Assembly: GCF_032191835.1 (NCBI RefSeq)
Contig: NC_083224.1
Coordinates: 52,018,001-52,082,000, forward strand
Direction: 5' to 3'
Length of the DNA: 64,000 nucleotides
From: Heteronotia binoei
Taxonomy: Eukaryota
Below are positions 15,341 through 52,703 of the stretch, in pieces. Numbering within the stretch: position 1 is the stretch's first letter; every line of letters starts with the position of its first letter. The notes under the pieces were generated by a model that was not told the origin of the DNA, ran no database searches, and was given only the letters and a program-made list of their open reading frames with translations. Made by a program: the position numbers and the translations under genes.

Positions 15341-18300
15341 ATTGTCCTGTTATTTGCGAAGTGTCCTGAGAGTGGAAGGGAGACTTGGGAGTCATGTGAG
15401 GATAATTAGCCCTGTCGGTCAGCAATAGAACAGCTAGACTCGAATCCCATAATACGTTACTTAGACTCTCTAAGGCTTAGAGACAGCAAGATTTTCAGGG
15501 ATGAGCTTTCTAGAGTCAGCGCTCCTGTCCTCAGGGAATCCAGAATAGATCTCTTAGTGGAGGAGAGGAGGAGTGGATGGCTGGCCTGTTGATTCACTTT
15601 TCTTAACTTAAGCGCTGGCCTGTTTTTTAAAAATGTGGTGCTGCAATATGTAGAGGATTGCATTACTCGATCACTGGTATGAAAGATTTCCAGGGTAATT
15701 CAGTGAGTTTGTTGTGGCAAAGCTTTACAAAACACTTCATCATCTGACATCAACCATGGTGGCCTCACTTTGATAGGAATGTAGAATATAAATACGTATG
15801 GAGGGGTATTGCCTGCTATTGTTATTCTTTATGTACAGCTAGTATCATATAAAAACATTGCAGATTGTGTTTCATGACCTTTTGACACCAAGCTTAAACT
15901 TTTTCTTTTGTTTGAGTATCTATATATCTGCCAACTGAGAATATACTTCTTGTTTCTGAAGAATGAAGGCCACAAAAAGCTTACTCTATGGTTTTTGTGG
16001 TGCCGTAACCTTCTTTCTTTAAGGTGGTGTGGTTTGTGTTTATGATGTTGGCTAGTGTGAAACAACTTGTTCATGGGGGTACATTATCAGATTGTGTGAT
16101 GACTTGGGCAATTGATGTATTTCTCAATAATTTATAATAAAAAGGCTCTGAAGACAAAGGAGTCCAGATGTTTTCAGAGCCTATTTCCCCCCAATCTTAC
16201 CCAAGGTCAGTAGGTAAAAACAGATTGACCACCCCTGGGCCAAAAGAAGTTAAACTTCGGACTACCTATGCACGGGCCTTCTCTACCGCGGCCCCTTCCT
16301 TGTGGAATCAACTCCCAGAGGAGGTGCGGGCCCTGCGGAACCTTGATCAGTTCCGCAGGGCCTGCAAGACCACCCTTTTCAAACAGGCATTCATGAACGG
16401 CTGACCAAGTCCACAAAGAAACATCAAAATGGTCCAGTCTGGAGATCCGCCATCATTACACAAACTGACAGGCATAGCGTCGATTAATAACGGTACTGTC
16501 AGATCTAACTTAATGTTTTTAGACTTAGTAACTGTTTTAACTAATGTATTAATCGGTTTGGGGTTAATTTAATGTTTTGTTAAATGTATTGTTATTTTGC
16601 TGTTGTTAGCCGCCCTGAGCCTGCTTGGCGGGGGAGGGCGGGATATAAATAAAATTTTACTTACTTACTTACTTACTTACAATCTTACAGGATCCACTCT
16701 GGAAGGTATGTGTATGAATTATAGGGCTATTCACAAATATAAAATTTTGATCTTGTTTTTTCTCTGCAGGATGAGTTTCTAGATGTGATTTATTGGTTCC
16801 GGCAGATCATTGCTGTTATTTTGGGAGTGATCTGGGGCATTGTTCCACTAAAAGGATTTATAGGCATAGCAATGTAAGTTTTTTGTTGTTAAATATTCTA
16901 CAGCTGGTAACAGTAGTAGGTTAAGCACTTGAGATGACAAGGTGATAGAAATCTTTCTCCATGTACATTGCTGGAAGTCATCAATTCACAAATGGTGAGA
17001 GTCTGCAGTCTTCTTGCATTGGATTGTGCATGAAATACAGAAGAGTGAAGGTCAGAGAAGATTATTAATTTTTTTACTCAGTGCAGATAGGAAAAAAGGA
17101 AGCCAAAACATTGGAAAGTATTAATACTGAAGATAATATTAAATTCTTACTTAGAACAGAATAAAGATTTCCCCCCCAAAAAAAGTCATTCTGTGTATAG
17201 AGAATTTTCAGTTGAAAGCCTACAGCAGCTGGGTTGGATCTAGCCTAAATTTTCCAATGGCAGAATGGAACTTTCCTTCCTCCCAGCTCCATGGCATGCT
17301 GCTCCTGGGCTCTGGGGGATCCCAAGGAATGACCGGGAAGGGGGGGGAGGAGGCATGGTTAACAGAAAAGAAGAATCAGTAGAACTTGCCAGTGTAGTCT
17401 GGATCAGGGTAAACTCCTGGATGACAGTCACTCTGATGCCTAAAGTGTTTATACATTTCAAGTCTGTGCAGGATTTGTACCCAAAATGGTAGCTTTGGCT
17501 GAACATTTATACTGATATATTGGAAACCCATGGTTTCTTCTATCTCTAGCGATAACTAGTTTTAAAAAGCAAAGAGTGCTAACTGGAGTTAGTAAACAAA
17601 GTAGCATATGGAGTCCTTGCATGCATTTCAATTCTCTAACTTAGCCAGTTTCACAGCTCTGCAAGAGTGCTTCAGGTGCTTGCTGTAGCTCTTCTTATAG
17701 ATTCATTTGTCTGGCCATCAGGAAAACCTCCTATGCTTGCCATGTTGAAATGCATTGGAGCTGGGTTCTCAAGCATCTTGTTAAATTCACTGAAGCTTTC
17801 ACAGGTTATCTTCCTGATGGATCATGGCTTAAGTATTTGAATGCATACTGTCATTTTAAAATGGTGGCTTTCAATTGCTGTTATTTTCTTCCTCTCCAGA
17901 TTCTGCCTCATAAATGCCGGTGTCCTATACCTCTATTTTAGTAGCTTCCAGCAAATAGATGAAGAGGAGTATGGAGGAACATGGGAGCTAACAAAGGAAG
18001 GGTTCATGACATCTTTCGCATTGTTTTTGGTAAATTTATGTTACATGTTCTTAGATGTGAGGCCTTATGTACAGAGCCACAATATAAAATAAGAGGCAGA
18101 TTATCACTCCATGAAACTTTTAAAAATGTTTAACTAGTGGGAAAAGAAGCAAAGAAGAGGTGAGGGAACAAAAAGATAAGTTGCACTATATGATTGCAGC
18201 TTTAGAGAGTTATATGTATTATTTGTCATTGAGTTTGATAGATACATTAGAAGACTCAGGCAGGCAAAACTTTTCTTTACTGGCATCAGTGATGTCCTTG

Positions 18301-27446: not shown

Positions 27447-27646
27447 TTAGTTTCTGAACTCACAGCTGTAAGAGCTGAATTTTGGTCGTTGGTACATGAA
27501 TGTGTAAGAATCACAGAAGAATCTTCTGGAAAATTGATCAATTTTCTTGATATCCACAGCAGAAATCTCTTCTGATGTCATTGCCAGATAGTGTCCAAGC
27601 TGAGGAGAGGCCTTTACCACAGGGATATATGATCCTTTCTCATTCT
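27447..27646 (-). CDS. CYLD-like last coding exon (stop TAA at 27449-27447)
   Basis: NEKGSYIPVVKASPQLGHYLAMTSEEISAVDIKKIDQFSRRFFCDSYTFMYQRPKFSSY vs human [58 protein letters not shown]; acceptor ttctttatag|. Confidence 0.92.
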
Positions 27647-27897
27647 CTATAAAGAAAACATAACCAGTTAAAAAAAAGTGAATAATGAAAAGATTACCAA
27701 TAGGCTGAGGAACAGCCATCTAAGGGGCTGAGCAAGGCTCGTTAAGTGTCCAAGCTGAGGAGAGGCCTTTACCACAGGGATATATGATCCTTTCTCATTC
27801 TCTAAAGAAAACATAACCAGTTAAAAAAAAGTGAATAATGAAAAGATTACCAATAGGCTGAGGAACAGCCATCTAAGGGGCTGAGCAAGGCTCGTTA
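27590..27897. repeat. Tandem direct duplication (155 + 153 nt) spanning the CYLD-like last-exon acceptor
   Basis: 27590-27744 and 27745-27897 are identical apart from a 2-nt indel; AGTG microhomology at the junctions. Confidence 0.95.
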
Positions 27898-29461
27898 AGT
27901 GCTTTGGATGAAAGCAATAGAGTTAATTTTAACAATACTAAATCTTGAAAAGACCCAGTTAAATTAATGCACAAATTTAAAGTGAAAATACACCCCACAT
28001 ACATTGATCTGTAGAAACCAGTGCCACCAGTATTTTCTTTAGATTTTTTTAAAAAGTCTAGATCAAGGATTTCCCATGTGGCCTCCATGGGTGCCATAGT
28101 GCACAGACACCTTTCCCGGCATCCATCAAGTGCTCCTGTCCAACAGAGCAGGCTTCTGATTTGCTACTGGAGGTCCAGGTGGAGATGCAGATGAAAATGA
28201 CTTCATTGCAGCAGCAACTGCCTCCACAATGCTGGTTTTATTCTTTCCCAGTTTTTAAGTTACCCTTCTCTTCTGGGCTTCCTCTATGTGGACTCTGCCT
28301 CCAGTGGCAACGATTTGTTACCTTGTGTTAGAGTTCCAAAGGTGCCCACAAGTTCAAAAATGTCAGAGGTCTCCAACAGTCCAAAGTAACTTTTGTGTTC
28401 CAAAGAACAATGATTCTCAGCCTTTTGTATCTTACATCCCACCAATCATCTGTCAAAGAACCTTAGTCCTGCCATGACAGAAACAACCCCCCCCACACAC
28501 ACACACACACATCTTTCCATAAAGGACACACAGCCCCAGTCCAGCAAGGGGCTTGCCAGTGGCATCCTTAGCACTCTGCACAAGGATCCAGTAGCAGATA
28601 CCAAACAGTGCAGATGAAACCAGATTAAGAAGGGAGAGCTGTGTGCAGAAACTAGCTTATGCATATAGAGTTTCTCTAACCCAGTCCCCATGCACACAGC
28701 AATTCTTCTCCCTCCCAGCTTTAAAAAAAAAAATTGGCAAGTTAGTATGTTATAACGATTATTGGTATATCAGGTTTCCTGAATCTCCCATTTTCATTTT
28801 TAAAAGTCTCCAGCCCAAGGGTATGAATTTAATCACAAATCAAAAAAGCTCCTCTGTGTGTGTAGGAAATGACTGCTGCAGGTATGGGACAGGGAGAATC
28901 TTGTAGACATGGAAACCATCCAGGCTTTGCTGTGATTTTCCCCAAAACTTTACAACAAAGCAATGTTGGAGAAAAAGTAGGGAAACCCCAGGAAGTACAT
29001 GAATGTATTATGATGCTGTGGGGAAGCAGGAACTCCCCACCCCTGCTCCTATCATCATGGGACCTGGAGTGAATAACCGATGTGGAAGTGGCCATGGTGT
29101 CCTGTCTGGGGATCAGAAGCATGTTGAATGCACTGGCAGCCATCAGGAATGCGGAGGCTGGGCTTAGAGACTCACGTTGTGATAGCTAAGCTCCAGATGA
29201 TAAATACTTCTAAGAAATGTGAGGTGGGTAGGGATCAGTAAGTATGTGGGCATCATTTTCTGCTGCATCCATGTAGCTAAAGAAAACTCAGTCTTGTGTG
29301 TTTACAGGTGGATTGCTCTACCAATATGTATTGCTTCATAGTGTAATCATTAGCAGCAGGAGCAGCCCGCCCACTAGGTGAGAGCTGTAGAGGCTGTTAT
29401 TACACCAACTGGGAACAGTGTTACCACAGTGTCATTCAGGACAACAGAAACTTGCTGAGAC

Positions 29462-29915
29462 TGAGAGGGGAAAAGATCTTGGGGTCATAGTGGATAGCTC
29501 GATGAAAGTGTCAACCTAGTGTGTTGTAGCAATGAAGAAGGCAAATTCTATGCTATGGTTTATTAGCAAAGGGATTGAGAATTAAACAGCCAATATTGTA
29601 ATGCCCCTGTATAGATCTATGTGATGACCACAGGAATCAACAGCTTTAAAAGGGGATTAAATACGACAGATCAGGCAGCTAGCACCATACAGTCTATCTG
29701 TGATTATTAGCAATGGTGACTGAGGGGAACCAACATGTTGAGAGGCTCTAATCCTCTGAATCCCAGAGCCAGGAACCAACATCAGGGAAAGGCCTCAGCC
29801 TCTATTCCCTGTTGTTGGCCCTCCAGAGAAACTGTTTGGTCTCTGTGTGAAACAGGATGCTGGCCTAGATGGACCACTGGTCTGATCCAGTGGGGCTCTT
29901 ATTATGTTCTTATGT
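29462..29915 (+). mobile_element. CR1 LINE 3' fragment (degenerate RT end and 3' UTR)
   Basis: gatcttggggtcatagtggatagctcgatgaaagtgtcaac...aagaaggcaaattctatgct and terminal ggaccactggtctgatccagtggggctcttattatgttcttatg. Confidence 0.8.
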
Positions 29916-30514
29916 GAACCTAAGAGTTGGAAAAGACTGGTGCTTGCACAGAGGACTACCTTTTTAAGCAGAGTTAGTGGCAGTCTCAAGTGCTACCCCT
30001 GGCCTTGGCACCATTGCCTGCTTCTCCACCACCCAGCTCCAACATGCTCCTTCCCTCTGGCTTGGCGGAGGCTTGGGGCATGGTGGCCTGCCTAGCTTGC
30101 CATCTTCTCCCACAGTAGGAGGGAAGGAGACAGGAACAGGCAGGCACCAGCTCCACCATGCTCCTTTTCTCTGGCTTCACAGCTTGAGTTGCAGTGGCTT
30201 TCCCTGCTTGACCCTTCCACCCTGCCCTGTCCTACCAAGAGCAGGCAAATGACAGTTCTGTTGTGCTCCCTCCTTCTGGCTTCACAGAGGCTTTGAGTAC
30301 TTGGAGTGCACCCAGGCCGTGGCAGGGCTGTGTGCTTCTGGCAGGTGGGCACTGTTAGTGGCTGGCCTAAGACACCAAAAGCCCTCAGATGGGCCCTGGT
30401 TTGCTGATTGTTGAGTTGTGTGCAATCTTTCTGGATCAGTAGGTCTTCAGTTTGGCAGACACATTTCTAACACAACCAGCATAAAATCTTTACCATGGTT
30501 ACAAACTTGCTTAC

Positions 30515-30623
30515 CTTGGTCAACCAAGCTTGTGAGGTCAAGTTCTAGAGAAGGATACATTGATGAAAATGTCTTAAACCCCTTTCCAAACCTTGGCATT
30601 TGTAAGATGAGGCATGAAGGAAT
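30515..30623 (-). CDS. CYLD-like USP exon (109 nt)
   Basis: IPSCLILQMPRFGKGFKTFSSMYPSLELDLTSLVDQ vs human [36 protein letters not shown]; ctctttcag| and G|gtaagc. Confidence 0.95.
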
Positions 30624-31309
30624 CTGAAAGAGAAGAGCCATTTTGAAGACTCTCTGCTAACAGATTTGCAGACGTTGGCTCAAGAAAGACTGGACAACAG
30701 ACAAGGGTTGCTACATGTGTTTTTGCTGATATTTGAAAGACAGTTCTCTAGCCTAGAAGACTCTATGAAATTTTCATAGACTTGGAAATGCAGTACATAT
30801 CCGTTTGGATTCAGATTTGAGTTCAGCCACAAGATCCTTCCATGGGCAGGCCACAAATAATAATTTAAAAAATCTTACCCACCTGCCGTTTCCCATCTAT
30901 ATAGTCAGGGTATTGAGAATTTACAGCGGCATTGTTAGACTAAACATAAATGGTATGAAGCACATTACATATTAAAAGTGCTATGGAATTTATGTAAAAC
31001 AAAAATAATGACAAGACTCTGTCACTGAAGACAGGAATCCTCCCTAGCACAGGCACAATGGTCTATTCTCATTCCCACCCAACACTGTACATTAGCATTA
31101 TGAAGAACCTGAGATCCGTCTGTTTCTCCCACATCCCAATATAGCTTTCCCTCCTTGCACTGGCCCTCAAGCTTCAGCGAGATCAGAGGGAAGAAATGGG
31201 GCTCTGTTGAAGTACATGGGACTCCCTGTGCTTACAGGCACTGCTTCCACCAGGAAGGAGTATCGTCTGCAAAAGGGAGTGATACAACATTACTTATCTC
31301 ATTACCTAC

Positions 31310-31439
31310 CTCAGCAAATTTCAAGTCATAGGAAAGCAGAGATTCTTCCAGTCATTGCTGCACAGCGGGCATGTTGACCATACTGTCTCTTGCCACAAGA
31401 ACTTGATAACAATTATACTCAAGTACTTCGTTGCCTGCC
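31310..31439 (-). CDS. CYLD-like USP exon (130 nt) with an in-frame TGA at 31354-31352
   Basis: AGNEVLEYNCYQVLVARDSMVNMPAVQQ*LEESLLSYDLKFAE vs human SAGQKVQDCYFYQIF...[21 protein letters not shown]; cctag| and GAG|gtaggt. Confidence 0.9.
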
Positions 31440-31958
31440 CTAGGATTTCACAGCAAAAGAATACAAAGTTGTTTAGAGGCCTATTATGTCTTTTCCCCCC
31501 AGACAAATGCATCAGCTAGCATCAAAATCTGTTTAAAAATGAGAGATATATAGGAAGCACCTCTGAGCTCACTTCAAATTCTTAGGCCAAAACTAATCTA
31601 GCTGTAGCATGGGAATGCATTTATTGCATCTGAAGAGAAAAGGGCAAGGAGTCTGTTCTATGAAGAACTAGATTCAAGTCCAGGGGCACCTTAGAGACCA
31701 ACAAGATTTTTGGGGTGGGTGGAGTATGAGCTTTCTAGAGTCAAAGTTCTCTTTGTCAGATACCTTCTTTTCATAATGTCACTCAGCAGGAACTCATTTG
31801 CATATTAGGCCATATCCCCTGACATCAAGCCAGCTGGAACTGCATTGCTGTGTATTCCTGCTCAAAAAAAGCCCTGCCGCTCAGTAGATATATGGGCTTC
31901 TAACTCCACCTAGTATGTGCCTGCCAGGCCAGAGGGTGCAGAGTCTCTGAACCAGCTT

Positions 31959-32342
31959 TAGGGCTGCCAAGCCCCCATCTGGGCGGGGATTCCCCCACCC
32001 AGGGGGTTCCCAACCCACTGGCCCACATTGGGCCAGCAGGGGAAACCCCCCCGCAAACGTCATCAGCGCAATGACATCACCAGGAAGTGATGTCATCGCG
32101 CCAGTGCATGGCAGCTGCTCTGAGCATTTCTGGGGAAACTTTATGGTTTTCCCAGATGCTCTAGCCATTTGGGAGGGAAAACTCTATGGTATAAATAGGT
32201 ACCATAGAGCTTTCCCATCCCAAATGGCTAGAGCATCCGGGAAAACCATAGAGTTTTCCTGGAAACACCTAGAGCAGCCACGAGTGCCGTTCCCAGTGCC
32301 ATGACATCACTTCCAGAGAGCGGAGAGGTCTTGGCAACCCTA
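31959..32342. mobile_element. TAGGG(C/T)TGCCA-type hAT MITE
   Basis: tagggctgccaag ... ttggcaacccta terminal inverted repeats. Confidence 0.65.
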
Positions 32343-32602
32343 GCCAGCCTATCCCCACCCAGTCTCAGGCCAATTCACATTCTACACATATTCCCCTCTC
32401 ATAGACTGTTGACATGTTTGGCCTGGGAGTTCCCTGCAACACAAAGGGGCCCATATTGGATCATGACTACAGCACATGTGGGAAAGAACCTTTTCCTGCC
32501 TCCATGCCATTTTCCCTACCTGAAATAGCACCAGGAAATACTATTTGCTGCTCTAGGGAAACTAATGTAACCAGCCACATATGTAAATTTTTGTAACAGA
32601 AG

Positions 32603-32878
32603 AAGGTGATGATGATGATATTGGATTTATATCCCACCCTGCACTCCAGATCTCAGAGTCTCAGAGTGGCTCACAATCTCCTTTACTTTCCTCCCCCACA
32701 ACAGACACCCTGTGAGGTAGGTGGGGCTGACAGAAGCTGCCATTTCAAGGACAACCTCTGCCAGAGCTATGGCTGACCCAAGGCCATTTCAGCAGGTGCA
32801 AGTGGAGGAGTGGGGAATCAAACCCGGTTCTCCCAGATAAGAGTCCACACCCTTAACCACTACACTAAACTGACTCTC
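32603..32878 (-). mobile_element. Squam3-type tRNA SINE
   Basis: Reverse complement of the 13789 SINE. Confidence 0.85.
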
Positions 32879-33405
32879 TGCTGTGGCTGTTCGAGACTGG
32901 GAAAACAGTCTCCTTGAATGTCACAGTCCTGATTCAAGCGAAGTCCCTGTACGCTTGGGAATAAGTTCCAAGCATAGATCTACCAGAGCACGTCTGACTG
33001 AAAGGCCATGGTAGCCAAAAGGCAATCAGCCCATCATACATCAGCAATCCATTGCTTCCTTTTATTCATTGCCAGTGCTAGGGCCTCTTTTGAAAGAAAT
33101 TGGACACAACATTTTGGTTTGCTTTCAAGTCAGTTGCCACAGCTGCAAGGGCTAAGGCTGTTTTCCCACCACCACCCCAGCTTTTAATAAGGAGGATGGG
33201 CAGCTTTGCGTGCCAGGCTCATGTCCCCTCCCCCCTGACTTGTCCAAAACTGCTGGGCTCCACCCTTAGGCTCCATCTAGGTACTGGATTTAAAAAAAAA
33301 CAAATTAATTGCAAGAGTTTTCAGCCTAAGTCATGAATCATGCTTGTGAGACCAAGAGTGGCACTCAAATGACGAGATAAAAAACCCAACACATCAAATT
33401 CTTAC

Positions 33406-33472
33406 TTGATTTTGAGCAAGGGCTCTATAGCCAGGACCTCTCCTAGAAGGACATTCAGGAATTCCTCTGGAT
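33406..33472 (-). CDS. CYLD-like USP exon (67 nt)
   Basis: DPEEFLNVLLGEVLAIEPLLKIK vs human [23 protein letters not shown]; tttacag| and AA|gtaaga. Confidence 0.93.
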
Positions 33473-34420
33473 CTGTAAACCAGATCAGCCATTAGAATAA
33501 CAAAAACCCTGGTGCAGCACAGTGGCTAAGAATGACCTGTGACTGGGAGGTCCTAGTTTAGATTTCATCTTTGTCACAAGCTCACTAGGTGGCCATCTGC
33601 AAGCCAGTCATGGTCAACTCTACTGGCAACATTGGTCCACCTTACAGGAAAAGGATACTGCAGTAAATATATCAGAAGAGCTTTTAACAATGAAATCACA
33701 AGGCATTCATTAAAGCAGTAATAGGGTTGCCACCTCCAGGTGACACCTAGAGATCTCCTGCTATTACAATTGATTTTCAGATGACCAAGATCAGTTCCCT
33801 TGGAAAAAGTGGCTGCTTTGGATGGTGGACTCTGTGGCATTATACCCTGCTGAGATCATCCATCCCCTACCAAACCCCACCCTCCCCAGGCTCCACCTCC
33901 CAAACCTCCAGGTATTTGCCAACCCAGAGCTGGCAACCCTAGAAATATGTCATCCAGGTCAATAGTGTTATGGGTACTGGAGTAAGCTTGGATTCTGGGT
34001 ACTGTGAGTTACTCTGTTTTATGGAATTGGCCAAAGCAGCATGCTAGAGGAAACCAGAGCTCATGACAAAAGAAATGACAATGTTTCTTATTGATATTAC
34101 TTCAGTTAACCTTAATGGCTAGGAAATGACTCTGTCCAAGCACCCATTAGGGTTTGAAGAATATGATCCCCCCCCCCCCGGAGTGATTCTACCTGTGTTC
34201 CATTAATACATCTGCAATTAAAACAAATGGCACAGAAATGCTAACAGACTCCTCAACCTGTCCTCCAAAAGGAATCCACCCAGGTAAACGCTACCTTTTG
34301 AATTTCTCACTGCCCAAGTAAGTGGGAGGGTGTAAAAATATGCAAATTTAAGGGAGGGAGGGGAGTGCAGTGTAGCAAGGTCGCTCTACCCAGCGAAGAG
34401 GTCATGCTCTTGTAGCTCAC

Positions 34421-34500
34421 CTTTCTCTTCTGTAACAAAACTGTCAGATTGCAGCAATTTCCTTAAGTTCATCACATTCTCAGCTCCCACATAGCCACAC
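34421..34500 (-). CDS. CYLD-like USP exon (80 nt)
   Basis: CGYVGAENVMNLRKLLQSDSFVTEEK vs human YGYVCATKIMKLRKIL...GFTSEEK; ccttgccag| and G|gtgagc. Confidence 0.92.
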
Positions 34501-34657
34501 CTGGCAAGGACTGATAGAGTTACAACATTACAAGTACTTAGTAATGCATGTTAAGTAATAGAGGGGGCAGGTCATCTAGTGGAGGATTACAGCTCCCTGG
34601 AAGGGTGGAGGCTGAGATCAGTGTACTGGTGGGTAGGTGAGACAATTTGGTATTGGG

Positions 34658-34692
<35 letters not shown>

Positions 34693-34739
34693 AAGAGAGA
34701 AAGAAGTCTGCTATAATATGTTATAATATGCTGTAGTGG

Positions 34740-34920
34740 CCTGAATAGCCATTAATAGCCTGATCTTATCAGAGTTTGGAAGCTAAGCAGGGTTGGCCAT
34801 GGTTAGTACTTGGATGGGAGAGCACCAAGGAAGTCCAAGGTTGCTATGCAGAGGAAGACAAAGATAAACCATGAGGTTTTCTTGCGTGGAAAACCTCATG
34901 GTTTCAGATCACCATATGTC
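34740..34920 (+). mobile_element. 5S rRNA-derived SINE
   Basis: cctgatcttatcagagtttggaagctaagcagggttggccatggttagtacttggatgggag closely resembles 5S rRNA; diverged body follows. Confidence 0.72.
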
Positions 34921-35904
34921 AGTTGTAAATTTACAGCACACAATGATTATTATAATAATGCTCTGCTCCCTAGATGGCATTGCAGGGTCTGTCATCTCAC
35001 TGTTAGCTTTACTTGCCTATTTGCTAAGCTAACACTCTTCTAATTTTTGATTACTTACAGCTAGAGATCCAGGTTCAAATCCTGTCCTGTAGCCACAAAG
35101 GGGCATTTGGGGGCAATGCCCACCACAGATGATCACTACCCCCACAGAAAAAAATTCCAAAGACTTAAGAAAATTTTAAAAACATATTTTAAAAATAATT
35201 TTTTAAAAAAAGCGATATATGTGGGGTTTTCAAAATGACCCTGGGCACAATCAGGGAAGTTTCAGTCTCGTTTTCTTTTTTTCTGGTCAGGAAATAAATA
35301 GGTTTTTAAAAATGCAAAATAAAATAAATTAAAATTGCATAAAATACAAAAAAAATTGCAAAATGCAAAAGAGAGAGAGACGGAGATTCCCGCCCCCCCC
35401 CCCATGTAAACGAGGAAGCCAGTAGAGTCACGAAGGCTGCAGGTGGGGAGCCATTCTGTCAGCAGCTTCCAACTCTCTTATTGCTCTGTCTCTCTCTCTC
35501 TCTTTCCCCTGGCTCCCCAGCCCCACAGGATTTCCCAATGCCCTGCCACCCAAAATTTTCTGGCTACACCCCTATTCAAAACCCTGCTCTGCAATGAAGA
35601 CTGCCAAGTGATCTTGGGTCCTAGCTTAACATACTTCATAGGGTTGTTGGTTTGCTTTTGTTGTTTTGGTATCTTTGTATTTTTATATGTTCATGTGTGT
35701 GTACATACCAACAACCAAAATTCAGCTCTTACAGCTATGAGTTCAGAAACAAGGATCTCTCTCTACAATTTCCAGCTCTTGGGGAGAGGATTTGGAAATT
35801 CAGGGACAATGATTCCACAAACCTTCCATAGAGGGCAGAAACCATGATTTTGGCATAGGCAGAAGCTTTATAGTTCAAAACAACTATACTCTGTGTGTGT
35901 GTGT

Positions 35905-36075
35905 GTATGCACACGCACCTGGAAGTCATAGCAAGCTCTGGTGACTGACCCCTACTGGGTGGCCTGGAGGATATTCAGGGAGGTGGCTGAATAAAGCCTG
36001 CCCCTGCCCCCCAACTGCTGGTTTTCCAAGGAGGTCTCCCATCCAGGCACTTGCCAGTTGATTAGAGTTAGTCTT
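35905..36075 (-). mobile_element. 5S-derived SINE (same family as 26950)
   Basis: Reverse complement of the 27000-27145 body. Confidence 0.6.
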
Positions 36076-36086
36076 GGCTCATAAAC

Positions 36087-36585
36087 TAGGCTTCCCAACC
36101 CTCCCGCCCTGGCGGGGGACCCCAGAATTTCCAGCCTCTTCCCCTGCTCCCCAAAAAAACGGAAGGGGGGGAACTGTGCCAAGGAGCCTGGCGAGCCGCC
36201 CCATCTCGGAGCGGGCGATGCCGCTGCGCTGCTTCCGCCTCTTCTCCGCTTCACCGTAGCTGCTCCTCCGAGATGGGCTCAGGCTGAGCCCATCTCAGAG
36301 GACCAGCTACGGTGAAGCGGAGAAGAGGCGGCAGCTGCGCAGCGGTGTCGCCCGCTTCGCCTCTGAGGTGAAATCAGAGAAGGGGAGGGTGAAGGGAAGG
36401 AAGGCATTTAAAAAGTTGTGAGGTCCTTTTAATTGTGATGGACAGAACTCCCTTTGGAGTTCAATTGTGCTTGTCACACCCTTGCTCCTAGCTCCACCCC
36501 AGTGTCTCCTGGCTCCACCCCAAAAGTCTCCTGGCTCCACCCCCAAAGTCCCCAGATATTTCTGGAATTGGACTTGGCAACCCTA
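36087..36585. mobile_element. hAT-Blackjack-like MITE with an internal CpG-rich palindrome
   Basis: taggcttccc/ggcaacccta ends, perfect TSD tcataaac (36079-36086 and 36586-36593). Confidence 0.8.
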
Positions 36586-37610
36586 TCATAAACATAGATT
36601 AGCAGCAATTTGGGAAACTCATAATCATAACAAATAATCAGATTGGCATTTTGATCAATGCTTTCAGCCTTTCTGTATACTCATTTTCACTGCCCATTGG
36701 AAAGATTTCTTGTTCTGTGTATGTTTTATAAAATACATAAGATGATATCTTTTAATGGCCTTATGTATTAGGCAGAATGAACTGCTCCAATGAGGAATAA
36801 TGGCTTGTATCCAAGCTTGATTTTCTACCTGCTTAAGAGCACTTCCACTTGGCAGGAGGGAGGCATTTTTGCTGTCTTCCTACTACTACTGAAGACCCCT
36901 ATATTGTACCCAGTGCTGTTTCTACTGGGTTCCCAAGCAGCATTTGTTTATTTATTCATTTGCAAGGGTGTGTGCACTGGACTGCAGCAGAGAAGGGAGA
37001 TAAGAAGTTTCTGGTAGTCTTGCTCAGTGCCTTTCATAGCATTTCAAGAGATTGGGCCATATTTTCTGAGCCTGATACGGCAAGATTTTTCTACTTCACC
37101 TTCCCAGTTCCAGGATATTCAGAATTTATCATTTGTTCTGTTCACTGACCTGGAATAGTAGCTGGTCTGGGTTTACACACACTTGGGGCCAAACTGAACA
37201 TTGCGGTTATAATGTCTGGGTTCCCTGGACCCAACTCATATTACCTGCAGCCACACAGCAGTTGTGGGGAACAGTTTCTTTTTTAAAAGGAGAGCCCAAA
37301 CAAGTTTGGAATGGCTTCTGCCCCCACCAGCCATTTCCCACACAAAAACCACTCGGTTTATTTCCTTGATTTTGTCGCTTGTCATGCACAGATACACCAC
37401 ACAAAGCATCAAAACTGGGTAAATGGCTTTTGTAAAATGGCATTGTGTAAATGTCACCTTTTCCCCTCAAAACTAAAAGCACCTCTACTGATCAGTAGCT
37501 TTATCTGTACAGTAAATAATACACAGCAGTCCAATACCAAAAACTCAACAGCTCGAAGAATCCAATTCATCAATGCAGTACAGACACTTGAGAAATGTGG
37601 TGGAACTCAC

Positions 37611-37718
37611 TGTCTCAATGGTTCCACAATCTCCTGTCTTAGTATTTGCTGTGCTGTTGTATCGTGTACCTCAGCAGAATCAAGGATGCTATCCAAGGCA
37701 GAGGAGAAACTGAATAAA
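37611..37718 (-). CDS. CYLD-like USP exon (108 nt)
   Basis: LFSFSSALDSILDSAEVHDTTAQQILRQEIVEPLR vs human LFAFSSVLDTVLL...QELLRTEIVNPLR; tttatag| and CA|gtgagt. Confidence 0.92.
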
Positions 37719-38102
37719 CTATAAAGAAACACACACAGAATATGTACACTGAAGTATAAAATAGATTGAATCACAATGAATCACAAAACATAGCCTGCTA
37801 TTATCTAGGCCCAGTCCATGTACTGACTACACTGCGCCATCTCTGAGGCAGTAGCAACCCCAGAGCACAACATACAACTGTAACTCCATCCAGTTAGTCA
37901 TTTTGCAGGTGATAAGAAAAATGAATATTCTAAAATGGCCAAAGCATTGTTTTTGGAAGAGGCAGCCGACATAGCAAAGTAAAGGAAGGAAAAGACACTG
38001 GTTTTGAAAAGAGCAGGACTGGATCCAAGCTGGAGTCAATGAGGAGAGGAAACTCACAACCCACGGAACTAGGCTCCCATTCAGAGTTAGCACACAACAA
38101 AC

Positions 38103-38244
38103 CTGAAAAGGGTTGTGTCGAGGTAGCAGGAATTGCATTGTCCCCGGATTCCCTTCATGGCACCTTCCACCTTCAGCAAAATTTCATGTTCCCAAGCTGC
38201 TTCACTGTTATTTTCTGCCCAATTCCGAATTAGGTATCTGCCCT
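38103..38244 (-). CDS. CYLD-like USP Cys-box exon (142 nt)
   Basis: GRYLIRNW...GAMKGIRGQCNSCYLDTTLFS vs human [20 protein letters not shown]; acceptor ttttctag, donor AG|gtttgt. Confidence 0.93.
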
Positions 38245-38275
38245 CTAGAAAAACAGTATGTACTTGTTTAGGCTT

Positions 38276-38758
38276 AGGGTTGCCAAGTCCAATTCAAGAA
38301 ATATCTGGGGACTTTGGGGGTGGAGCCAGGAGCAAGAATGTGACAAGCATAATTGAACTCAAAGGGAGTTCTGGCCATCACATTTAAAGGGATCGCACAC
38401 CTTTTAAAATCCCTTCCTTCCATAATAAACAATGGATAGGGGCACCTTCTTTCGGGGCTCATAGAATTGGACCCCCAGTCCAATCTTTTTGAAACTTGGG
38501 AGAAATTTTGGGGAGAGGCACTGGATGCTATGCTGCAAATTTGCTGCCTCTATCTCAAAAAACAGCCCCCTCCAAAGCCCCAGATACCCACGGATCAATT
38601 CTGCATTATTTCCTATGGGAATAAGACTCCATAGGGAATAATAGAGTTCCCGGTAGCCATTTCCCTCCCCTCACTCCGCTTTCTGATGATTCTGAAGTGG
38701 GTGGAGGGCCTCCAAACTGGGGGATCCCCTGCCCTCACCTGGGGATTGGCAACCCTAC
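38276..38758. mobile_element. TAGGGTTGCCA-type hAT MITE
   Basis: tagggttgccaag ... ggcaacccta; body shared with 36400-36585 and 57545-58000. Confidence 0.7.
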
Positions 38759-39697
38759 ATAAACAGATTCCTATATAAAGACTGTGAAAACAATGCAAAA
38801 CAAGCACAGAGACACACACTTCTGTGCGTTCTTTCTTTTTTTCTTTCTTTCTCTCTCTCTCTCTCTTTCACACACACACTTAACTGTCTCTGGTGCCTCC
38901 ACAAGGAGGTCCGACGAGTACTGGGGCTACGCTGCTCTCTTTTACACACACACTTACTTGCTCTGAAACAAACCAAAAAAAATGGAGGGGAGGGGCTCTG
39001 CTGCTGACCCTTCCCCATAAAGTACTTCCTGCTTAACTTTAAAGGCACACACAAACATTTTGAAACCGGATCTGTTTGCAGGTTTCTAAACCTGCTGGAT
39101 ATCTACAGGTACATGGTGGCTATGGGGGAGGGGATTCCCTCGCCGGCCAGCTGGCTGGGGGCGGGAGGAAGCCTGTAAAACCAGGGGATCCTTTGCTGGG
39201 ACCTGGGGATTGGGAAGCCTATTTAGGCTACATCTCCATTAGAAAGAAGGAGCAATCCAACTTTATTAGAATAACTAGTCATCTGGATTTTTGGCCACTG
39301 TGTGACAGTGTTGGACTGGATGGGCCACTGGCCTGATCCAGTATGGCTTCTCTTACGTTCTTATATTCTTATATAAAGTCTCCACATTATTTATATTCTT
39401 ATATAAAGTCACCACTGGATGGGAGCCTAGTCAAACAAGTGTACCTAATTTAAAAAATGGTGGTCAAATGAAGATTTCAGAAAACGGGCTTTGGAATACA
39501 TTCCACAAGGTTCTATGGAGCTGTAGACCAGCTTAGCCTGAGCTCATCAGAGCTTGGGAGTTAAGCAGGGTTGGTCACAGTCAGTACTTGGAGACCACTA
39601 AGGAAGACTGGGATTGCTGTGCAGAGGCAGCCAATGGTAAATCATCTCTGCTTCACAGCACATTCTTCTTCAGTCTCCTCATGATGGGTACTATATT

Positions 39698-39824
39698 CCA
39701 GGGTAGCTCTCCAGATGCTTTTTGCCTACAACTCCCATCAGCCCCAGCCAGCATGGCCAATGGCTGGGATTGATGGGAGTTGTAGGCAAAAAACATCTGG
39801 AGAGCTACCATTGGCCATCCCTGC
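39698..39824. mobile_element. Palindromic hAT MITE (same family as 62505)
   Basis: Foldback structure; TSD ctatattc/ctatagtc. Confidence 0.7.
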
Positions 39825-40753
39825 TATAGTCCACTTCTGTTGATCTGACAGGCTTTAGCATCTTTCCACATGATGTTTTAGATCTAAGGGATATGACAAA
39901 AATGTCAAGATGTGTTCAGGGGGCACCCTGTTCCCTCCATGTAGCATAGTCTGGTACCAAGGTTGAAAGAGGTTGGGCTGCAGTAGAGACAAGAGGCAAC
40001 TCCCAATCCAACACATTTCTAATGAGCAGATGTGGTCCCTGAACGTTCTCCTTTTCACAATGTGCCTTTTCATAATTTTACCTCTGTGCCACCCAAAGAA
40101 GGAACAAGACATAAAGGGAAACCTAGTAAAAAGTCTGTTAAATGAGTGCAGAAAATACATTCATGTGAGCTGAGGCTGGATCCTAAGGAGAATTTCCCCA
40201 AATGGAAGGGGAAGCAATTTCCCCACATTCCCACCTCTTGCCTCAGACCTCTAACTTCATGCTGTTCCTGGGGAGGGGGCGGATATTCCTTGTCTTCCAG
40301 GAGTAGCATGGGAGACTGAGGGAGGTGGAAGGTGAAGAAGTTCTGTTCTGCTGACAGAAATCACTTCAGCCAGTAGAAATTTTATGCAGGAGCCAAGCCA
40401 TTTTTATCATATCAAGGAGGCTATGGTTGGGTTTGAGTGCAGACCTGCCCCTCCCAATAACAGTTAAAGCTGCATCATGGAGAACTCCAAGACAAAGAAG
40501 CAAGGCACAAGTTTTTTTCAATAAGATGATTATGACAAAAATGTGAGGTTCTGGAATAAAAGGCAATCCTTTGAAATCAGGAAAATTGTGCAGTAGGACT
40601 AGAGATCCCTATGGCAGGTAACAAGGTACAAACAAAGGTGAAATATTAGCCAGTCAAGTAGTCAAGCCCTCTTGCCATTTTTATGAGGTCTTTGCTCAAT
40701 TTCATTACAGCAGGGAGAAATGGCAATAGTGGAGCTAACCCTGAGAATCTTAC

Positions 40754-40808
40754 TTGCATCCACCTTCAGTCTAGAGAACCTGTTACTAAGAGCAACAATC
40801 CTGGGATC
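40754..40808 (-). CDS. Candidate 55-nt CYLD-like linker exon (DPRIVALSNRFSRLKVDA)
   Basis: Acceptor tttttcactgcattag|GAT, donor GCAA|gtaaga; phase 0 in and phase 1 out, which bridges exon 1 to the Cys-box exon; sequence similarity is weak. Confidence 0.4.
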
Positions 40809-41109
40809 CTAATGCAGTGAAAAACATCAGTGTTAAAATGGAAACATTTGTGTCAAGCAAAAATCTATACATTGCTGTGGACTTGTAACTACAGCAATGC
40901 TATATTTCATCAGCAATTCTGTAAATATTTTAGAATATGTGTGTCTTAAAGGATGAGGGATACACAGGTGCATAGACAGGAGGTAGCAGAAGACCCAGAG
41001 AGTAAGAGCTGTGGAGAGAGGAATGGGAAGAGTCAAGTTATTCTGCCAGAAGCTTCCAGTCACCAGAAGGCCCAAAAAACCACCAAAAACACCCTGAACC
41101 AAGTATTAC

Positions 41110-41546
41110 CATGCCCTCACCAGCATTCACCTCAATGAGAACCATTTTCAGATCTTCATTGCCAGGATTCCTGAGCCGTTCCCAGAAGCCTCTCACAATG
41201 CCAGCTGTCATTACGCTGCCATATCTCAGGAAGACCACATCATGGAGTTTCAGGAAGCAAATGGAGGTGAAGTGCTGCTCATTGCAAAAAAGGCTGTACC
41301 TCTTTTTGGGGCTGTCAATGGCGAGCAAGAGGGCAGCCTGATGGTGATTTAGTGGGTTTATGTGGCTGCTCATCAAGGCTATGACAGGCCTAGATTTCTG
41401 GTCAACAATGTGGCCTATGTTGTGTTTCCCCTTGATGAAGCATCCAATAGACCCCAAAGGGATCTTCTTTCTGCCTGCATGGATCTCTTGACTCTCAATG
41501 AAGGCCTCCTTCTTCTCCAGCACAAATTCCATGGCTGGCAATAGAC
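41110..41546 (-). CDS. CYLD-like first coding exon (N-terminal region and start of a CAP-Gly1-like fold); ATG at 41532
   Basis: Acceptor ttttgcag|GTC at 41546, Kozak GCCAGCCATGG, open frame MEFVLEKKEAF...KKIPLGSIGCFIK...LLLAIDSPKKRYSLFCNE...GIVRGF...MVLIE; candidate donors after 41131, 41121 or 41110 (cannot choose between them). Confidence 0.85.
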
Positions 41547-50599: not shown

Positions 50600-51300
50600 A
50601 GCAGTCCAAAGTCCCATCTCATTGCGCATCCCTCGCACGTGGGAAGCCGACCGGGTGGGGTGTGGGTGACATTCCCCCTGATGCCTACTCGGGTCTTCAG
50701 TAAGGGGCGTCCGCGGCTCACGAAGCTGGGGGGCGGTCCCTGGGTGACAAGCCCCGCCCACTAGCCAGCCTCCTATCGGCCGGGGCCTGCCATCGCTCGC
50801 CCTCCTTTCCCCAGCCGCTGCTGCGCCGGCTCCCCTCCAGCTCCAGCCCGGGCGGGCGGGCGCTTCAGTCACTTCCGGAGCAGGCGCCCGCCTGGGTGGG
50901 CAGAGAGGCGCGAGCAGGATGGCGGCGGCAGTGGCGGCGCCGGGGGCTGCTGCAGGGGCAGCCGAGAAGGAGGCGAGTCAGCAGAGCAGCCTGGGCGCCT
51001 ACTCGCCCGTGGACTACATGAGCATCACCAGCTTTCCCCGCTTGCCCGAGGAGGAGGCGGCGGCGGCTGGCAGCGTCAGCGCGGCCGAGAGCTGCCTGCG
51101 CTCCAGGAAGGAGGAAGATGCGTTCCTGGGAGAGCAGGACACCGGTGAGAGCGGACGCCTGCCTGCCCGCCTCCACCCGACCATCCTTGTGATTCCATCC
51201 ATGCATCACCTCTCCCTCCCTCTCACCATCCCGGCCGCCTGCCGAGCATCCCTCCGCCAGCCTGCCTGCCTTTCCATAGGTGCATTGCTCTCAGGACGCC
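50600..51300 (+). promoter_or_regulatory. GGT7 CpG-island promoter
   Basis: CpG-dense; GC boxes (gggcgggcggg near 50850) and ETS-type ACTTCCGG at 50871-50878 just upstream of the ATG. Confidence 0.8.
50919..51144 (+). CDS. GGT7: Gamma-glutamyltransferase 7, coding exon 1
   Basis: MAAAV...EKEASQQSSLGAYSPVDYMSITSFPRLPEEE...RKEEDAFLGEQDT, matching the human GGT7 N-terminus; donor G|gtgaga. Confidence 0.96.
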
Positions 51301-52703
51301 CCCCCCACCCCGCCTGCGTCATCCCTTCCTCCTGTCCCCAGGCATTTGGCTCCAGCCCAGCCCCCTTTCCATGATGCGGCCATCCTAGCATCCTTGGCCT
51401 CAGAGAGCAGCTGCCCGGCCTCCATCCCTTGGGCTTGCACTCCTCTGGGTGTCCCAGCCCACTGTCCCATGAATCTGTAGCTCGCTGTTCTGCAGCCATC
51501 TTTTCCTATTTCCCCTTTCCCTCCATATCAAGAGATCGTGCTCCAAGCATCTTTTGGTGCATGTCTCGTTGTGCTGTTCCTGCCACTTCCTTCCACATTT
51601 CTGTCGTTTCCTTTCTCTTGCCTTGCTGGCATTCTCCTCTGTCTCCCATTTCATTTTCAGTTCCTTCTCCCTGCTTTTCACTGTTGGGGCAATAAAGTAA
51701 GTGACTTTACTGCTTCTATTTCTCCAAAGCTTGCAGTCTGTAGATGCACCCGCCACCCATATTTTTACTTTTCCAATAAACTAGCTTGCCCCGATCTTCA
51801 TCATCTTCCAAAGTCTCACTTTCTTTAGCAAAATTCCCAAGTGCTGTTTAAGGGAGCTTTTTGGATCTTATGATTTCCCCTCTCTTTCTTTTGTCCATTG
51901 GATAGCAAGGTGAGATGTGCTCAGAGGCTGGTCTTTGGGGTGCTGCCAAGTTAATTACTGAGCCTTATTGATTCCAACCAGAGAATCTGATGCTCTTCTG
52001 TTGAATCCTTTTTGTCCCCTAATGCTTGAAAAGCAGGTGGAAATGGTTTGATAGGAAATAAGAGAGCAAAAACTGGACCACTGCAATTCTAACCCCCCCC
52101 CTCCCAAATCTTTTATTGCCTTACCAACAACAGGTAGTACCAAAGAATATATTTCTGGACTTCAAGATTCACACACTGCAAGAGCCAGATTAAATTAGAC
52201 AGGAGCTGTCAAGACCTACACATTTCATAATTTCAGATTCTTTTACAGTTGTTTAACTGAGTACATGTTTATCCTACCCTTACTCCAAGGAGTTTAGGGC
52301 ATTGTATATGGTTCTGCTTGCCCCTCCAATTTATCCTGACAACAACTTATGGGAAGTAGGTTATGCTAAAAGAGAATGAGTGGCCCAAGGTCAAGTCAGT
52401 AAGTTTTGTGGCAAATGGGGTTTGAACCTGGATCTTCCCTGGCATAGTTAAACACTCTTAACCACTCTGTCATGCTGGGTTTCAGAGGTGACGTGCAGAC
52501 AGTAGAGTTTCTATTTGGTTGTGTGTATCTGGCAAGACTGAAGCAGAATGTCCCTTGTAATATTACAATGGACCCATCCAGCAAAGCTGTCTGAGAGTAG
52601 GTTCAGGACTGACAAAAAGAAGTAAAAATTCTTCACCTGCTGTGTAATGATTTGTAAAGCAAGTGCTTGTGTCATCTCCTGTAGCCTATTTTTTTAGAGG
52701 TGG

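What the first reader, a model, noticed from the sequence alone, without database searches (positions are those of the whole stretch)
27447..41546. Hidden CYLD-like deubiquitinase paralog between RAB5IF and GGT7
Seen in sequence: eight minus-strand exons, most too short for the ORF track, splice in frame with canonical GT-AG sites and a strong Kozak ATG at 41532. They encode CYLD N-terminal and USP segments, including the Cys-box NSCYLD and the junction EEKD|PEEF. With the candidate 55-nt linker exon, the donor after 41131 and the TGA read through, the product is about 430 aa. Established: human CYLD (956 aa) is a K63/M1 deubiquitinase that restrains NF-kB and necroptosis, is single-copy in mammals, and lies far from GGT7 and RAB5IF. 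Inference: this is a divergent, non-orthologous CYLD-family locus of the kind retained in non-mammalian vertebrates, probably poorly annotated, with an unusually compact architecture.
Basis: partly seen in the sequence, partly recalled or inferred. Interest (0 to 1): 0.9.

Follow-up and report, generated by a model that had tools for sequence, protein, structure and literature searches.

The report
Broken CYLD-like deubiquitinase gene copy
This is a gecko's copy of CYLDL, an already named sister gene of the deubiquitinase CYLD that mammals have lost; here it carries a stop codon, damaged splice sites and a deletion of its catalytic exons, so it looks like a recently dead gene and not a hidden new enzyme.

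Summary
The exon chain is real. Nine minus-strand exons between 41532 and 27447 encode CYLD-family peptides (tblastn E down to 7.5e-63). Spliced RNA contigs of a related species confirm two of the junctions.

It is not CYLD. In a tree it nests inside gecko, squamate and tetrapod "CYLD-like" proteins. It lies between GGT7 and RAB5IF, as in Sphaerodactylus. Canonical CYLD sits intact on another chromosome.

This paralog is already known. It was named CYLDL in 2017 and is annotated as "CYLD-like" (551 aa) in Paroedura picta. Having no CAP-Gly domain is normal for tetrapod CYLDL.

What is special here is damage. Gekko kuhli, Paroedura and Sphaerodactylus each keep 11 open exons. This genome differs from them in five ways:
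- a 2-nt loss before the exon-1 donor;
- GT>GC at the exon-2 donor;
- TTA>TGA in exon 7;
- loss of exons 9 and 10 (B-box, catalytic His and Asp), which are found nowhere else in the assembly;
- a 153-nt duplication over the last acceptor.

Best reading: a recently inactivated CYLDL, either a unitary pseudogene or a null allele (0.75). The coding sequence shows no relaxed dN/dS yet. No reads of the window's own species were available to rule out assembly or haplotype effects. Interest is low.

The parts
41131..41532 (-). Exon 1 up to the cryptic in-frame donor GAG|GTGAAT: ATG at 41532, 134 codons, CYLD-type N-terminal region.
   Evidence: tblastn with P0050 gives E 7.5e-63 at 73% identity. Sequence and frame are shown. 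RNA contigs of a relative cover 41128-41549.
41111..41130 (-). Lesion 1. A 2-nt loss plus a substitution in the last four codons (VELL) ahead of the ancestral donor CTG|GTGAGG. Using that donor makes exon 1 412 nt long, shifts the frame, and gives a TAG eight codons into exon 2.
   Evidence: DNA alignment: window GTGAA--TGCTGgtgagg against GTGGAGCTGCTGgtgagg in Paroedura. The relative's mRNA carries GAACTGCT at this joint (table 5c).
40676..40808 (-). Exon 2, 133 nt (DPRIVALSNRFSRLKVDASK...HKN).
   Evidence: tblastn with P0050 gives E 5.9e-19 at 75% identity. The relative's RNA contig covers 40682-40809.
40670..40675 (-). Lesion 2. The exon-2 donor is GCAAGA, where Gekko, Paroedura and Sphaerodactylus have GTAAGA. 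A 10-nt intron deletion lies just behind it.
   Evidence: Alignment.
38103..38244 (-). Exon 3 with the catalytic Cys box (KGIRGQCNSCYLDTTLF). The motif GIQGH, shared by the compared tetrapod CYLDL proteins (Q invariant; H in all but one), reads GIRGQ here.
   Evidence: The spliced joint 38103/37718 appears in RNA contigs of a relative.
37611..37718 (-). Exon 4 (SLFSFSSALDSIL...EPLRQ), with AG and GTGAGT splice sites.
34421..34500 (-). Exon 5 (CGYVGAENVMNLRKLLQSDSFVTEEK).
33406..33472 (-). Exon 6 (DPEEFLNVLLGEVLAIEPLLKIK).
31310..31439 (-). Exon 7, which holds lesion 3: an in-frame TGA at 31354-31352 (codon 340). The codon is TTA in Gekko, Paroedura and Sphaerodactylus.
30515..30623 (-). Exon 8 (IPSCLILQMPRFGKGFKTF...LVDQ), with donor G|GTAAGC in phase 1.
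   Evidence: PDB hits to 3WXG and 2VHF at E 7.5e-12 and 5e-11.
28487..28942 (-). Lesion 4. A 456-nt single-copy filler stands where Gekko kuhli has about 2.3 kb (L009 25430-27748) holding exon 9 (B-box) and exon 10 (rest of the B-box, catalytic His box, Asp). The two exons sum to 306 nt, so skipping them keeps the frame.
   Evidence: blastn collinearity breaks at 28943 and 28486. tblastn finds no counterpart of P0050 residues about 390-470 in the window. Neither the exon-10 peptide nor the Gekko segment's exons are found elsewhere in the assembly. The filler is unique in the genome.
27745..27901 (-). Lesion 5. This is the upstream copy of a 153-nt tandem duplication. It carries a second acceptor and the first 57 nt of the last exon, then runs into a TAA. 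It is absent from the three other geckos.
   Evidence: the repeat finder families D1 and D2, the sequence itself, and the doubly matched L009, L020 and L021 ranges.
27447..27646 (-). Last exon (ancestral exon 11): ENEKGSYIPVVKASPQLGHYLAM...YQRPKFSSYSCEFRN, with stop TAA at 27449-27447.
   Evidence: tblastn with P0050 gives E 2.8e-30 at 79% identity. PDB hits to 3WXE and 2VHF at E 3e-11 and 1e-8.
35706..35863 (+). Inverted copy (88-96% alike) of the gene's 3' end (27289-27494), placed in intron 4.
   Evidence: the repeat finder I1 and I2. Only these two copies exist in the genome apart from an embedded 50-nt repeat. No forward-strand counterpart was found in the Gekko intron.
16743..18050 (+). 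Neighbouring RAB5IF-type gene (EMC6 domain exons at 16743-16874 and 17844-18050), convergent with the CYLDL 3' end.
   Evidence: Pfam PF07019 at E 5e-8 and 5e-4. Collinear with the L021 flank.
50877..51900 (+). Start of the neighbouring GGT7-type gene, upstream of CYLDL. Assigned by collinearity only.
   Evidence: tblastx shows collinearity with the first 2.5 kb of L021, where a G_glu_transpept gene is called.

Best explanation
The locus is the positional and phylogenetic ortholog of CYLDL. CYLDL is the ancient vertebrate paralog of the deubiquitinase CYLD that mammals have lost. In other geckos it is an 11-exon gene for a USP-class cysteine protease of about 550 aa: a CYLD-like N-terminal region, no CAP-Gly domain, then Cys box, B-box, His box and Asp. 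In this genome the gene has recently been inactivated and is a unitary pseudogene, or at least a null allele. The normal exon-1 donor is out of frame. The exon-2 donor is GC. Exon 7 has a nonsense codon. The two exons that carry the catalytic His and Asp are deleted. A duplicated acceptor competes for the last exon. Any transcript would meet a premature stop and probably be degraded. Even a fully rescued product could not hydrolyse ubiquitin chains. Shown here: orthology, the lesions, and their absence in three relatives. Inferred: the splicing outcomes, decay of the mRNA, the loss of function, and the ancestral enzymatic activity, for which no assay of any CYLDL was found.
For: Orthology:
- In the tree the window groups with Paroedura and Sphaerodactylus CYLD-like (100/100), inside squamates (100/100) and tetrapod CYLDL (100/99). 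It is apart from the genome's own canonical CYLD and two further paralogs.
- The same neighbours, GGT and EMC6/RAB5IF, flank the gene in Sphaerodactylus; Paroedura and Gekko share the RAB5IF side.

Lesions private to this genome:
- All 11 exons are open in Gekko kuhli, Paroedura picta and Sphaerodactylus townsendi.
- The window has the 2-nt loss at the end of exon 1, GT>GC at the exon-2 donor and TTA>TGA in exon 7.
- Homology to Gekko and Paroedura breaks at 28943 and 28486, removing exons 9 and 10.
- The exon-10 peptide and the missing Gekko segment's exons are found nowhere else in the 2.63-Gb assembly.
- A tandem duplication lies over the last acceptor.

These are five lesions of four different kinds, which is hard to ascribe to sequencing error. 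A relative about 91% identical expresses a normally spliced mRNA with the ancestral exon 1-2 joint. The paralog is known to be dispensable in a whole class of vertebrates, the mammals (PMC5381560).
Against: - Private substitutions on the window's branch are 17 nonsynonymous to 19 synonymous. That is no higher than in the three intact relatives.
- Hits at otherwise invariant residues are not clearly raised: 2 against 2-3 at deep invariants, and 15 against 6-13 among lizards. So there is no sign of long neutral decay.
- Each small lesion has a frame-preserving way round it: the cryptic donor at 41131, GC-AG splicing or the 55-nt donor, and the in-frame loss of 306 nt.
- No DNA or RNA reads of the window's own species could be listed. 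Haplotype or assembly effects are therefore not excluded.
Confidence: 0.75

Rival explanations
1. The locus still makes a useful protein: a catalytically dead, shortened CYLDL (a pseudo-deubiquitinase or ubiquitin-binding decoy). It would be produced through the cryptic exon-1 donor, GC-AG or 55-nt splicing of exon 2, some read-through of UGA-C, and direct joining of exon 8 to the last exon.
For: Every lesion has an in-frame bypass. 402+133 nt (or 402+55 nt) keeps the phase. Exons 9 and 10 sum to 306 nt. The stop is UGA followed by C, which from general knowledge is the leakiest context. The remaining coding sequence shows purifying-type substitution ratios on this branch.
Against: - It needs four unlikely events in one transcript.
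- Read-through of UGA-CUG is at most a few percent (general knowledge), and the codon is TTA in three relatives, so nothing was selected for recoding.
- The low dN/dS is equally expected if the gene died recently.
- The Cys-box motif GIQGH, shared by the compared tetrapod CYLDL proteins (H in all but one), is itself altered to GIRGQ.
- The duplicated acceptor leads to an early TAA.
Confidence: 0.08
2. The species has a working CYLDL. The lesions would then belong to one haplotype (a segregating null allele) or be assembly errors in this region.
For: No reads of the species could be laid to check any lesion. The lack of coding decay fits a very young or non-fixed allele.
Against: - There are five independent differences of different kinds within 14 kb: a substitution to a stop, a splice-site substitution, a 2-nt loss outside a homopolymer, a 2-kb replacement and a 153-nt duplication.
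- There is no N run or gap in the gene. The only N run in the window is 61262-61389.
- The neighbouring RAB5IF exons are intact.
- The missing exons are not on any other contig of the assembly.
Confidence: 0.15
3. It is the canonical CYLD ortholog, or a recent duplicate of it.
For: Shared Cys-box and USP motifs. NCBI names many family members simply 'CYLD'.
Against: Canonical CYLD lies at C14:56.37-56.40 Mb, with a His-box exon 69/73 identical to human CYLD. The tree separates the two with 99-100% support. The window has no CAP-Gly exon, whereas the three other loci have one.
Confidence: 0.01

Closest known systems
CYLDL / 'ubiquitin carboxyl-terminal hydrolase CYLD-like' of geckos, e.g. Paroedura picta XP_077191450.1 (551 aa; P0050) and Sphaerodactylus townsendi (P0069). 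The paralog was named CYLDL in Vlasschaert et al. 2017 (PMC5381560).
   Same: Same clade in the tree. Same neighbours (GGT7, RAB5IF). Same exon boundaries for the nine exons present. 73-87% amino-acid identity per exon. Same native C-terminus ...YQRPKFSSY.CEFRN.
   Different: This genome lacks exons 9 and 10 (102 codons: B-box, His box, Asp). It also has a nonsense codon, a 2-nt loss at the exon-1 donor, a GC donor at exon 2 and a duplicated last acceptor. The orthologs have none of these.
Canonical CYLD (human CYLD, USP domain PDB 2VHF; zebrafish 3WXE-3WXG)
   Same: Homologous N-terminal region and USP core. The Cys box is NSCYLD. Exon 8 and the last exon match at E of about 1e-11.
   Different: It is a different ohnolog on a different chromosome. 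There are no CAP-Gly domains and it is far more diverged. Canonical CYLD is separately present and intact in this genome.
Unitary pseudogenes of deubiquitinase paralogs (loss of CYLDL in mammals; lineage losses discussed in PMC5381560)
   Same: Loss of a dispensable DUB paralog in one lineage while relatives keep it.
   Different: Here the remnant is still almost complete and collinear, so the loss is caught early. Mammals are reported to lack the gene altogether.

Membership tests
CYLDL (vertebrate CYLD-like paralog) | Groups with CYLD-like proteins of other tetrapods and not with CYLD in a phylogeny. | tested here: met
   IQ-TREE, 30 rows, 560 columns. The window falls with geckos at 100/100, squamates at 100/100 and tetrapod CYLDL at 100/99.
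CYLDL (vertebrate CYLD-like paralog) | Conserved position between GGT7 and RAB5IF, as in other geckos. | tested here: met
   Called genes with PF01019 and PF07019 flank the ortholog in L021, and PF07019 in L009 and L020. The window flanks are collinear and the EMC6 exons are confirmed.
CYLDL (vertebrate CYLD-like paralog) | Complete 11-exon structure with an open reading frame of about 550 aa. | tested here: not met
   Nine of 11 exons are present, there is a stop at codon 340, and the ancestral exon-1 donor is out of frame.
Active USP-class deubiquitinase (Pfam UCH PF00443, CYLD type) | Catalytic Cys in the Cys box. | tested here: met
   NSCYLD is present in exon 3. The flanking GIQGH is changed to GIRGQ.
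Active USP-class deubiquitinase (Pfam UCH PF00443, CYLD type) | Catalytic His (His box ...SHYVAF...) and Asp (FFDSMA...). | tested here: not met
   The exon that carries both is absent from the window and from the whole assembly. It is present in three relatives.
Active USP-class deubiquitinase (Pfam UCH PF00443, CYLD type) | B-box insertion typical of CYLD-family USP domains. | tested here: not met
   Exon 9 and the first part of exon 10 are deleted.
Active USP-class deubiquitinase (Pfam UCH PF00443, CYLD type) | Match to the Pfam UCH profile over the domain. | tested here: inconclusive
   Single exons are too short for Pfam and gave no family. Orthologs P0002 and P0050 do carry PF00443.
Canonical CYLD | CAP-Gly domains (three in CYLD) ahead of the USP domain. 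| tested here: not met
   No Pfam hit in exon 1. The CAP-Gly parts of P0005 and P0048 find nothing in the window, while they do match loci C7, C15 and C14.
Canonical CYLD | Near-identity to mammalian CYLD in the USP core. | tested here: not met
   The C14 locus has 69/73 identity to 2VHF. The window's exons match at only E of about 1e-8 to 1e-11.
Programmed stop-codon read-through gene | The stop codon and its context are conserved in orthologs. | tested here: not met
   The codon is TTA (Leu) in Gekko, Paroedura and Sphaerodactylus.

The most novel reading that the evidence does not exclude
The frame-preserving set of changes is not decay but a remodelled gene. It would be a Cys-box-only CYLDL without B-box or His box, made with low-level UGA read-through, that acts as a non-catalytic ubiquitin- or partner-binding regulator (a pseudo-deubiquitinase) in this gecko lineage.
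Probability: 0.06. Interest if true: 0.5.

Novelty: already known. Interest (0 to 1): 0.15.

Why it matters
Its importance is modest.
- It shows that the 'hidden paralog' is the already described CYLDL. This gecko appears to be losing CYLDL, as mammals once did, while three other geckos keep it.
- It is a clean example of a young unitary pseudogene, with the remnant still collinear with intact orthologs. It could help date losses of this uncharacterised deubiquitinase and judge how dispensable it is.
- It is a warning for annotation. Frame-preserving bypasses can make a dead gene look like a compact new one. The intact Gekko kuhli gene, in turn, is mis-modelled as a 267-aa fragment.
- The side observation may be of more use: this genome holds four CYLD-family loci, whereas the literature found here speaks of one duplicate.

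Tried and rejected
- Pfam on single exons gave no CYLD-relevant family; the pieces are too short.
- PDB search with exon 1 gave only chance ribosomal-protein hits. The CYLD N-terminus has no solved structure.
- A run search on 27400-31500 listed none. The search on exon 1 listed only small-share runs of another organism. Laid on 37500-41600, these proved to be spliced RNA contigs of a relative about 91% identical. They are useful for exon junctions but cannot test this genome's lesions.
- I looked for the missing exons elsewhere. The window and the whole assembly, by peptide and by the Gekko DNA segment, gave only the three other paralogs and a common repeat.
- I tested whether the gene's C-terminus comes from a transposon, because 27405-27494 has an inverted copy at 35.7 kb. 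Rejected: the same C-terminus is present in Paroedura, Sphaerodactylus and Podarcis, and only two copies exist in the genome.
- I tested whether the 456-nt filler is a transposon. Rejected: it is single-copy.
- dN/dS and conserved-site counts gave no signal of relaxed constraint.
- A literature search for 'cyldl' mostly returned false matches to CYLD^L475P^.
- No structure or complex prediction was run. Neither would change the verdict.

Full report
**What is there.**
The window is G000:C2:52018001-52082000 of a 2.63-Gb vertebrate assembly. On the minus strand between 41532 and 27447, stop-free segments carry unmistakable CYLD-family peptides. A library-wide search with exon 1 returned two useful proteins. 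P0001 is a 78%-identical partial protein, later identified as Gekko kuhli KAL8179355.1. P0002 is a full-length 553-aa caecilian 'CYLD'.

tblastn with P0002 recovers a collinear chain in the window. The gecko protein P0050 (Paroedura picta 'CYLD-like', XP_077191450.1, 551 aa) and P0069 (Sphaerodactylus townsendi) recover it better:
- exon 1: E 7.5e-63;
- exon 2: E 5.9e-19;
- Cys-box exon: E 5e-17;
- the following five exons: 1e-8 to 1e-17;
- last exon: E 2.8e-30.

Exon 8 and the last exon also match the solved CYLD USP domains 3WXE-3WXG and 2VHF at about 1e-11.

**Exon model.**
From the sequence around each match and alignments to three orthologous loci, the exons are as follows.

| Exon | Window coordinates | Note |
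|---|---|---|
| 1 | 41532-41131 | to an in-frame cryptic donor |
| 2 | 40808-40676 | 133 nt |
| 3 | 38244-38103 | Cys box |
| 4 | 37718-37611 | |
| 5 | 34500-34421 | |
| 6 | 33472-33406 | |
| 7 | 31439-31310 | |
| 8 | 30623-30515 | |
| last | 27646-27447 | stop TAA |

Exons 3-8 and the last exon have AG acceptors, and exons 3-8 have GT donors.

RNA evidence comes only from another species. The runs found hold contigs about 91% identical to the window's exons. These contigs show a spliced joint 38103/37718 and an exon 1-exon 2 joint, in three runs from three studies. In that relative, exon 2 is covered down to at least 40682.

**What it is.**
A maximum-likelihood tree was built from 30 rows and 560 columns. 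It used CYLD-like proteins from sharks to lizards plus query-anchored translations of all four CYLD-family loci of this genome. The window falls with Paroedura and Sphaerodactylus (100/100), inside squamates (100/100), inside tetrapod CYLD-like proteins (100/99). The 700-aa one-CAP-Gly proteins of lungfish, ray-finned fish and cartilaginous fish lie outside these, in species-tree order.

The genome's other three loci form a separate, well supported group. The locus at C14:56.37-56.40 Mb is canonical CYLD. Its His-box exon is 69/73 identical to human CYLD 2VHF.

Synteny agrees. In Sphaerodactylus the CYLD-like gene lies between a gamma-glutamyltranspeptidase gene and an EMC6/RAB5IF-type gene. 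In Paroedura and Gekko it lies next to the latter. The window's flanks are collinear with these, and two RAB5IF-type exons are confirmed by Pfam.

The paralog is not new. Vlasschaert et al. 2017 (PMC5381560) describe a CYLD duplicate, 'CYLD-like' or CYLDL, that was deleted in all mammals. NCBI annotates orthologs of 537-580 aa in amphibians and squamates.

**What is wrong with it here.**
Gekko kuhli (L009), Paroedura picta (L020) and Sphaerodactylus townsendi (L021) each have all 11 exons open and in order. Against them the window shows five private lesions.

1. Just before the ancestral exon-1 donor, the window reads GTGAA--TGCTG|GTGAGG where the others read GTGGAGCTGCTG|GTGAGG (or GAATTGTTG). 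This is a 2-nt loss. With the ancestral donor, exon 1 is 412 nt, and exon 2 is then read out of frame into a TAG after seven codons. Only the upstream cryptic donor GAG|GTGAAT (after 41131) keeps the frame, at the cost of the four residues VELL. The relative's mRNA carries GAACTGCT at this joint, that is, the ancestral form.
2. The exon-2 donor is GCAAGA instead of GTAAGA, with a 10-nt deletion behind it.
3. Codon 340 in exon 7 is TGA (31354-31352). All three relatives have TTA.
4. Homology to Gekko runs up to 28943 and resumes at 28486. The 2.3 kb of Gekko in between hold exon 9 (B-box) and exon 10 (rest of the B-box, catalytic His box, Asp). They are replaced by 456 nt of single-copy sequence. 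No counterpart of these exons exists in the window or anywhere else in the assembly. The exon-10 peptide finds only the three other paralogs, and the Gekko DNA segment finds only a common repeat.
5. A 153-nt tandem duplication copies the last acceptor with the first 57 nt of the last exon. The upstream copy reads on into a TAA. The duplication is absent in the relatives.

In addition, an inverted copy of the gene's 3' end sits in intron 4 at 35706-35863.

**How to read this.**
These are five independent lesions of four kinds within one 14-kb gene. There is no assembly gap in it; the only N run is at 61262-61389. This is the signature of a gene that has lost its function.

With every bypass granted, the spliced frame is 456 codons with the stop at 340. 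Such a product would lack the catalytic His and Asp and could not be a hydrolase.

The read-through idea (s1-340740) is weak. From general knowledge, UGA followed by C is leaky, but only by a few percent at best. The TTA in three relatives shows a recent nonsense mutation and not a conserved recoding signal.

One observation argues against an old pseudogene. Private substitutions on the window's branch are 17 nonsynonymous to 19 synonymous, no worse than in the intact relatives. Changes at otherwise invariant residues are not clearly raised, although GIQGH next to the catalytic Cys has become GIRGQ. The inactivation is therefore recent, or the lesions sit on one haplotype.

Reads of the window's own species could not be found. 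Fixation and assembly accuracy remain untested.

**Odds.**

| Reading | Probability |
|---|---|
| Recently inactivated CYLDL | 0.75 |
| Haplotype or assembly effect in a species that still has the gene | 0.15 |
| Retained non-catalytic function | 0.08 |
| Canonical CYLD | about 0.01 |

**Comparison and novelty.**
The thing works, or worked, like a CYLD-type USP deubiquitinase. Membership in the CYLDL clade is met by phylogeny and synteny. Membership among active USP enzymes fails on the His box, the Asp, the B-box and the open frame. No functional study of any CYLDL was found, so linkage specificity is only inferred from CYLD. The kind is already known. The only new element is a species-level loss in progress. 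Interest is low.

**Noticed on the way.**
This genome has four CYLD-family loci. Besides CYLDL and CYLD, a locus on C7 groups with a widespread teleost clade of about 765 aa, and a locus on C15 is sister to canonical CYLD. The literature found here speaks of a single duplicate.

Noticed in passing
Own genome G000: C14:56370001-56400000; C7:4545001-4585000; C15:16775001-16805000 (loci L010-L019): The genome holds four CYLD-family loci. C14 is canonical CYLD. C7 and C15 are two further paralogs with a CAP-Gly, Cys box, B-box and His box. C7 groups with a widespread teleost clade of about 765 aa (P0030 and its hits), and C15 is sister to canonical CYLD. The 2017 paper that names CYLDL speaks of one CYLD duplicate only.
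   Followed up: partly
L009 (Gekko kuhli, GCA_051903775.1 CM122937.1:132641604-132678667): The deposited protein KAL8179355.1 (267 aa, 'UNVERIFIED_CONTAM ... partial') is a mis-model. It skips the Cys-box exon, reads exon 4 out of frame, and drops exons 8, 9 and 11. The locus itself has all 11 CYLDL exons open. Its last exon shows a 2-nt gap against the other geckos near the C-terminus.
   Followed up: partly
L020:20038-21085, L021:20885-21787, L009:26033-27093: The gecko CYLDL B-box keeps the first four Cys (C..C, C..C). The later Cys and His ligands seen in caecilian CYLDL (KQFCHLCERQVHSH) read KLLRGIAKKAFSH, which suggests a degenerate second zinc site in geckos.
   Followed up: no
window 39281-39417: A very high-copy repeat in intron 2. 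The summed contig depth reaches about 97,000 in RNA contigs of a relative, with many loose ends on both sides.
   Followed up: no
window 35706-35863 (+) and 27289-27494 (-): An inverted duplicate (88-96% alike) of the gene's last coding nucleotides and 3' flank has been inserted in intron 4. No forward-strand counterpart was seen in the Gekko intron. An embedded piece of about 50 nt (query positions 87-135) is a common genomic repeat.
   Followed up: partly
window 36207-36359 and 32114-32278: Two close inverted repeats lie in introns of the gene (76-nt arms 1 nt apart, and 68-nt arms 29 nt apart). They are probably repeat elements or hairpins.
   Followed up: no
one search hit list: No bird, turtle or crocodilian protein appears among the 120 best relatives of tetrapod CYLDL, while amphibians and squamates are many. 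This may mean further lineage losses, but the list is truncated.
   Followed up: no
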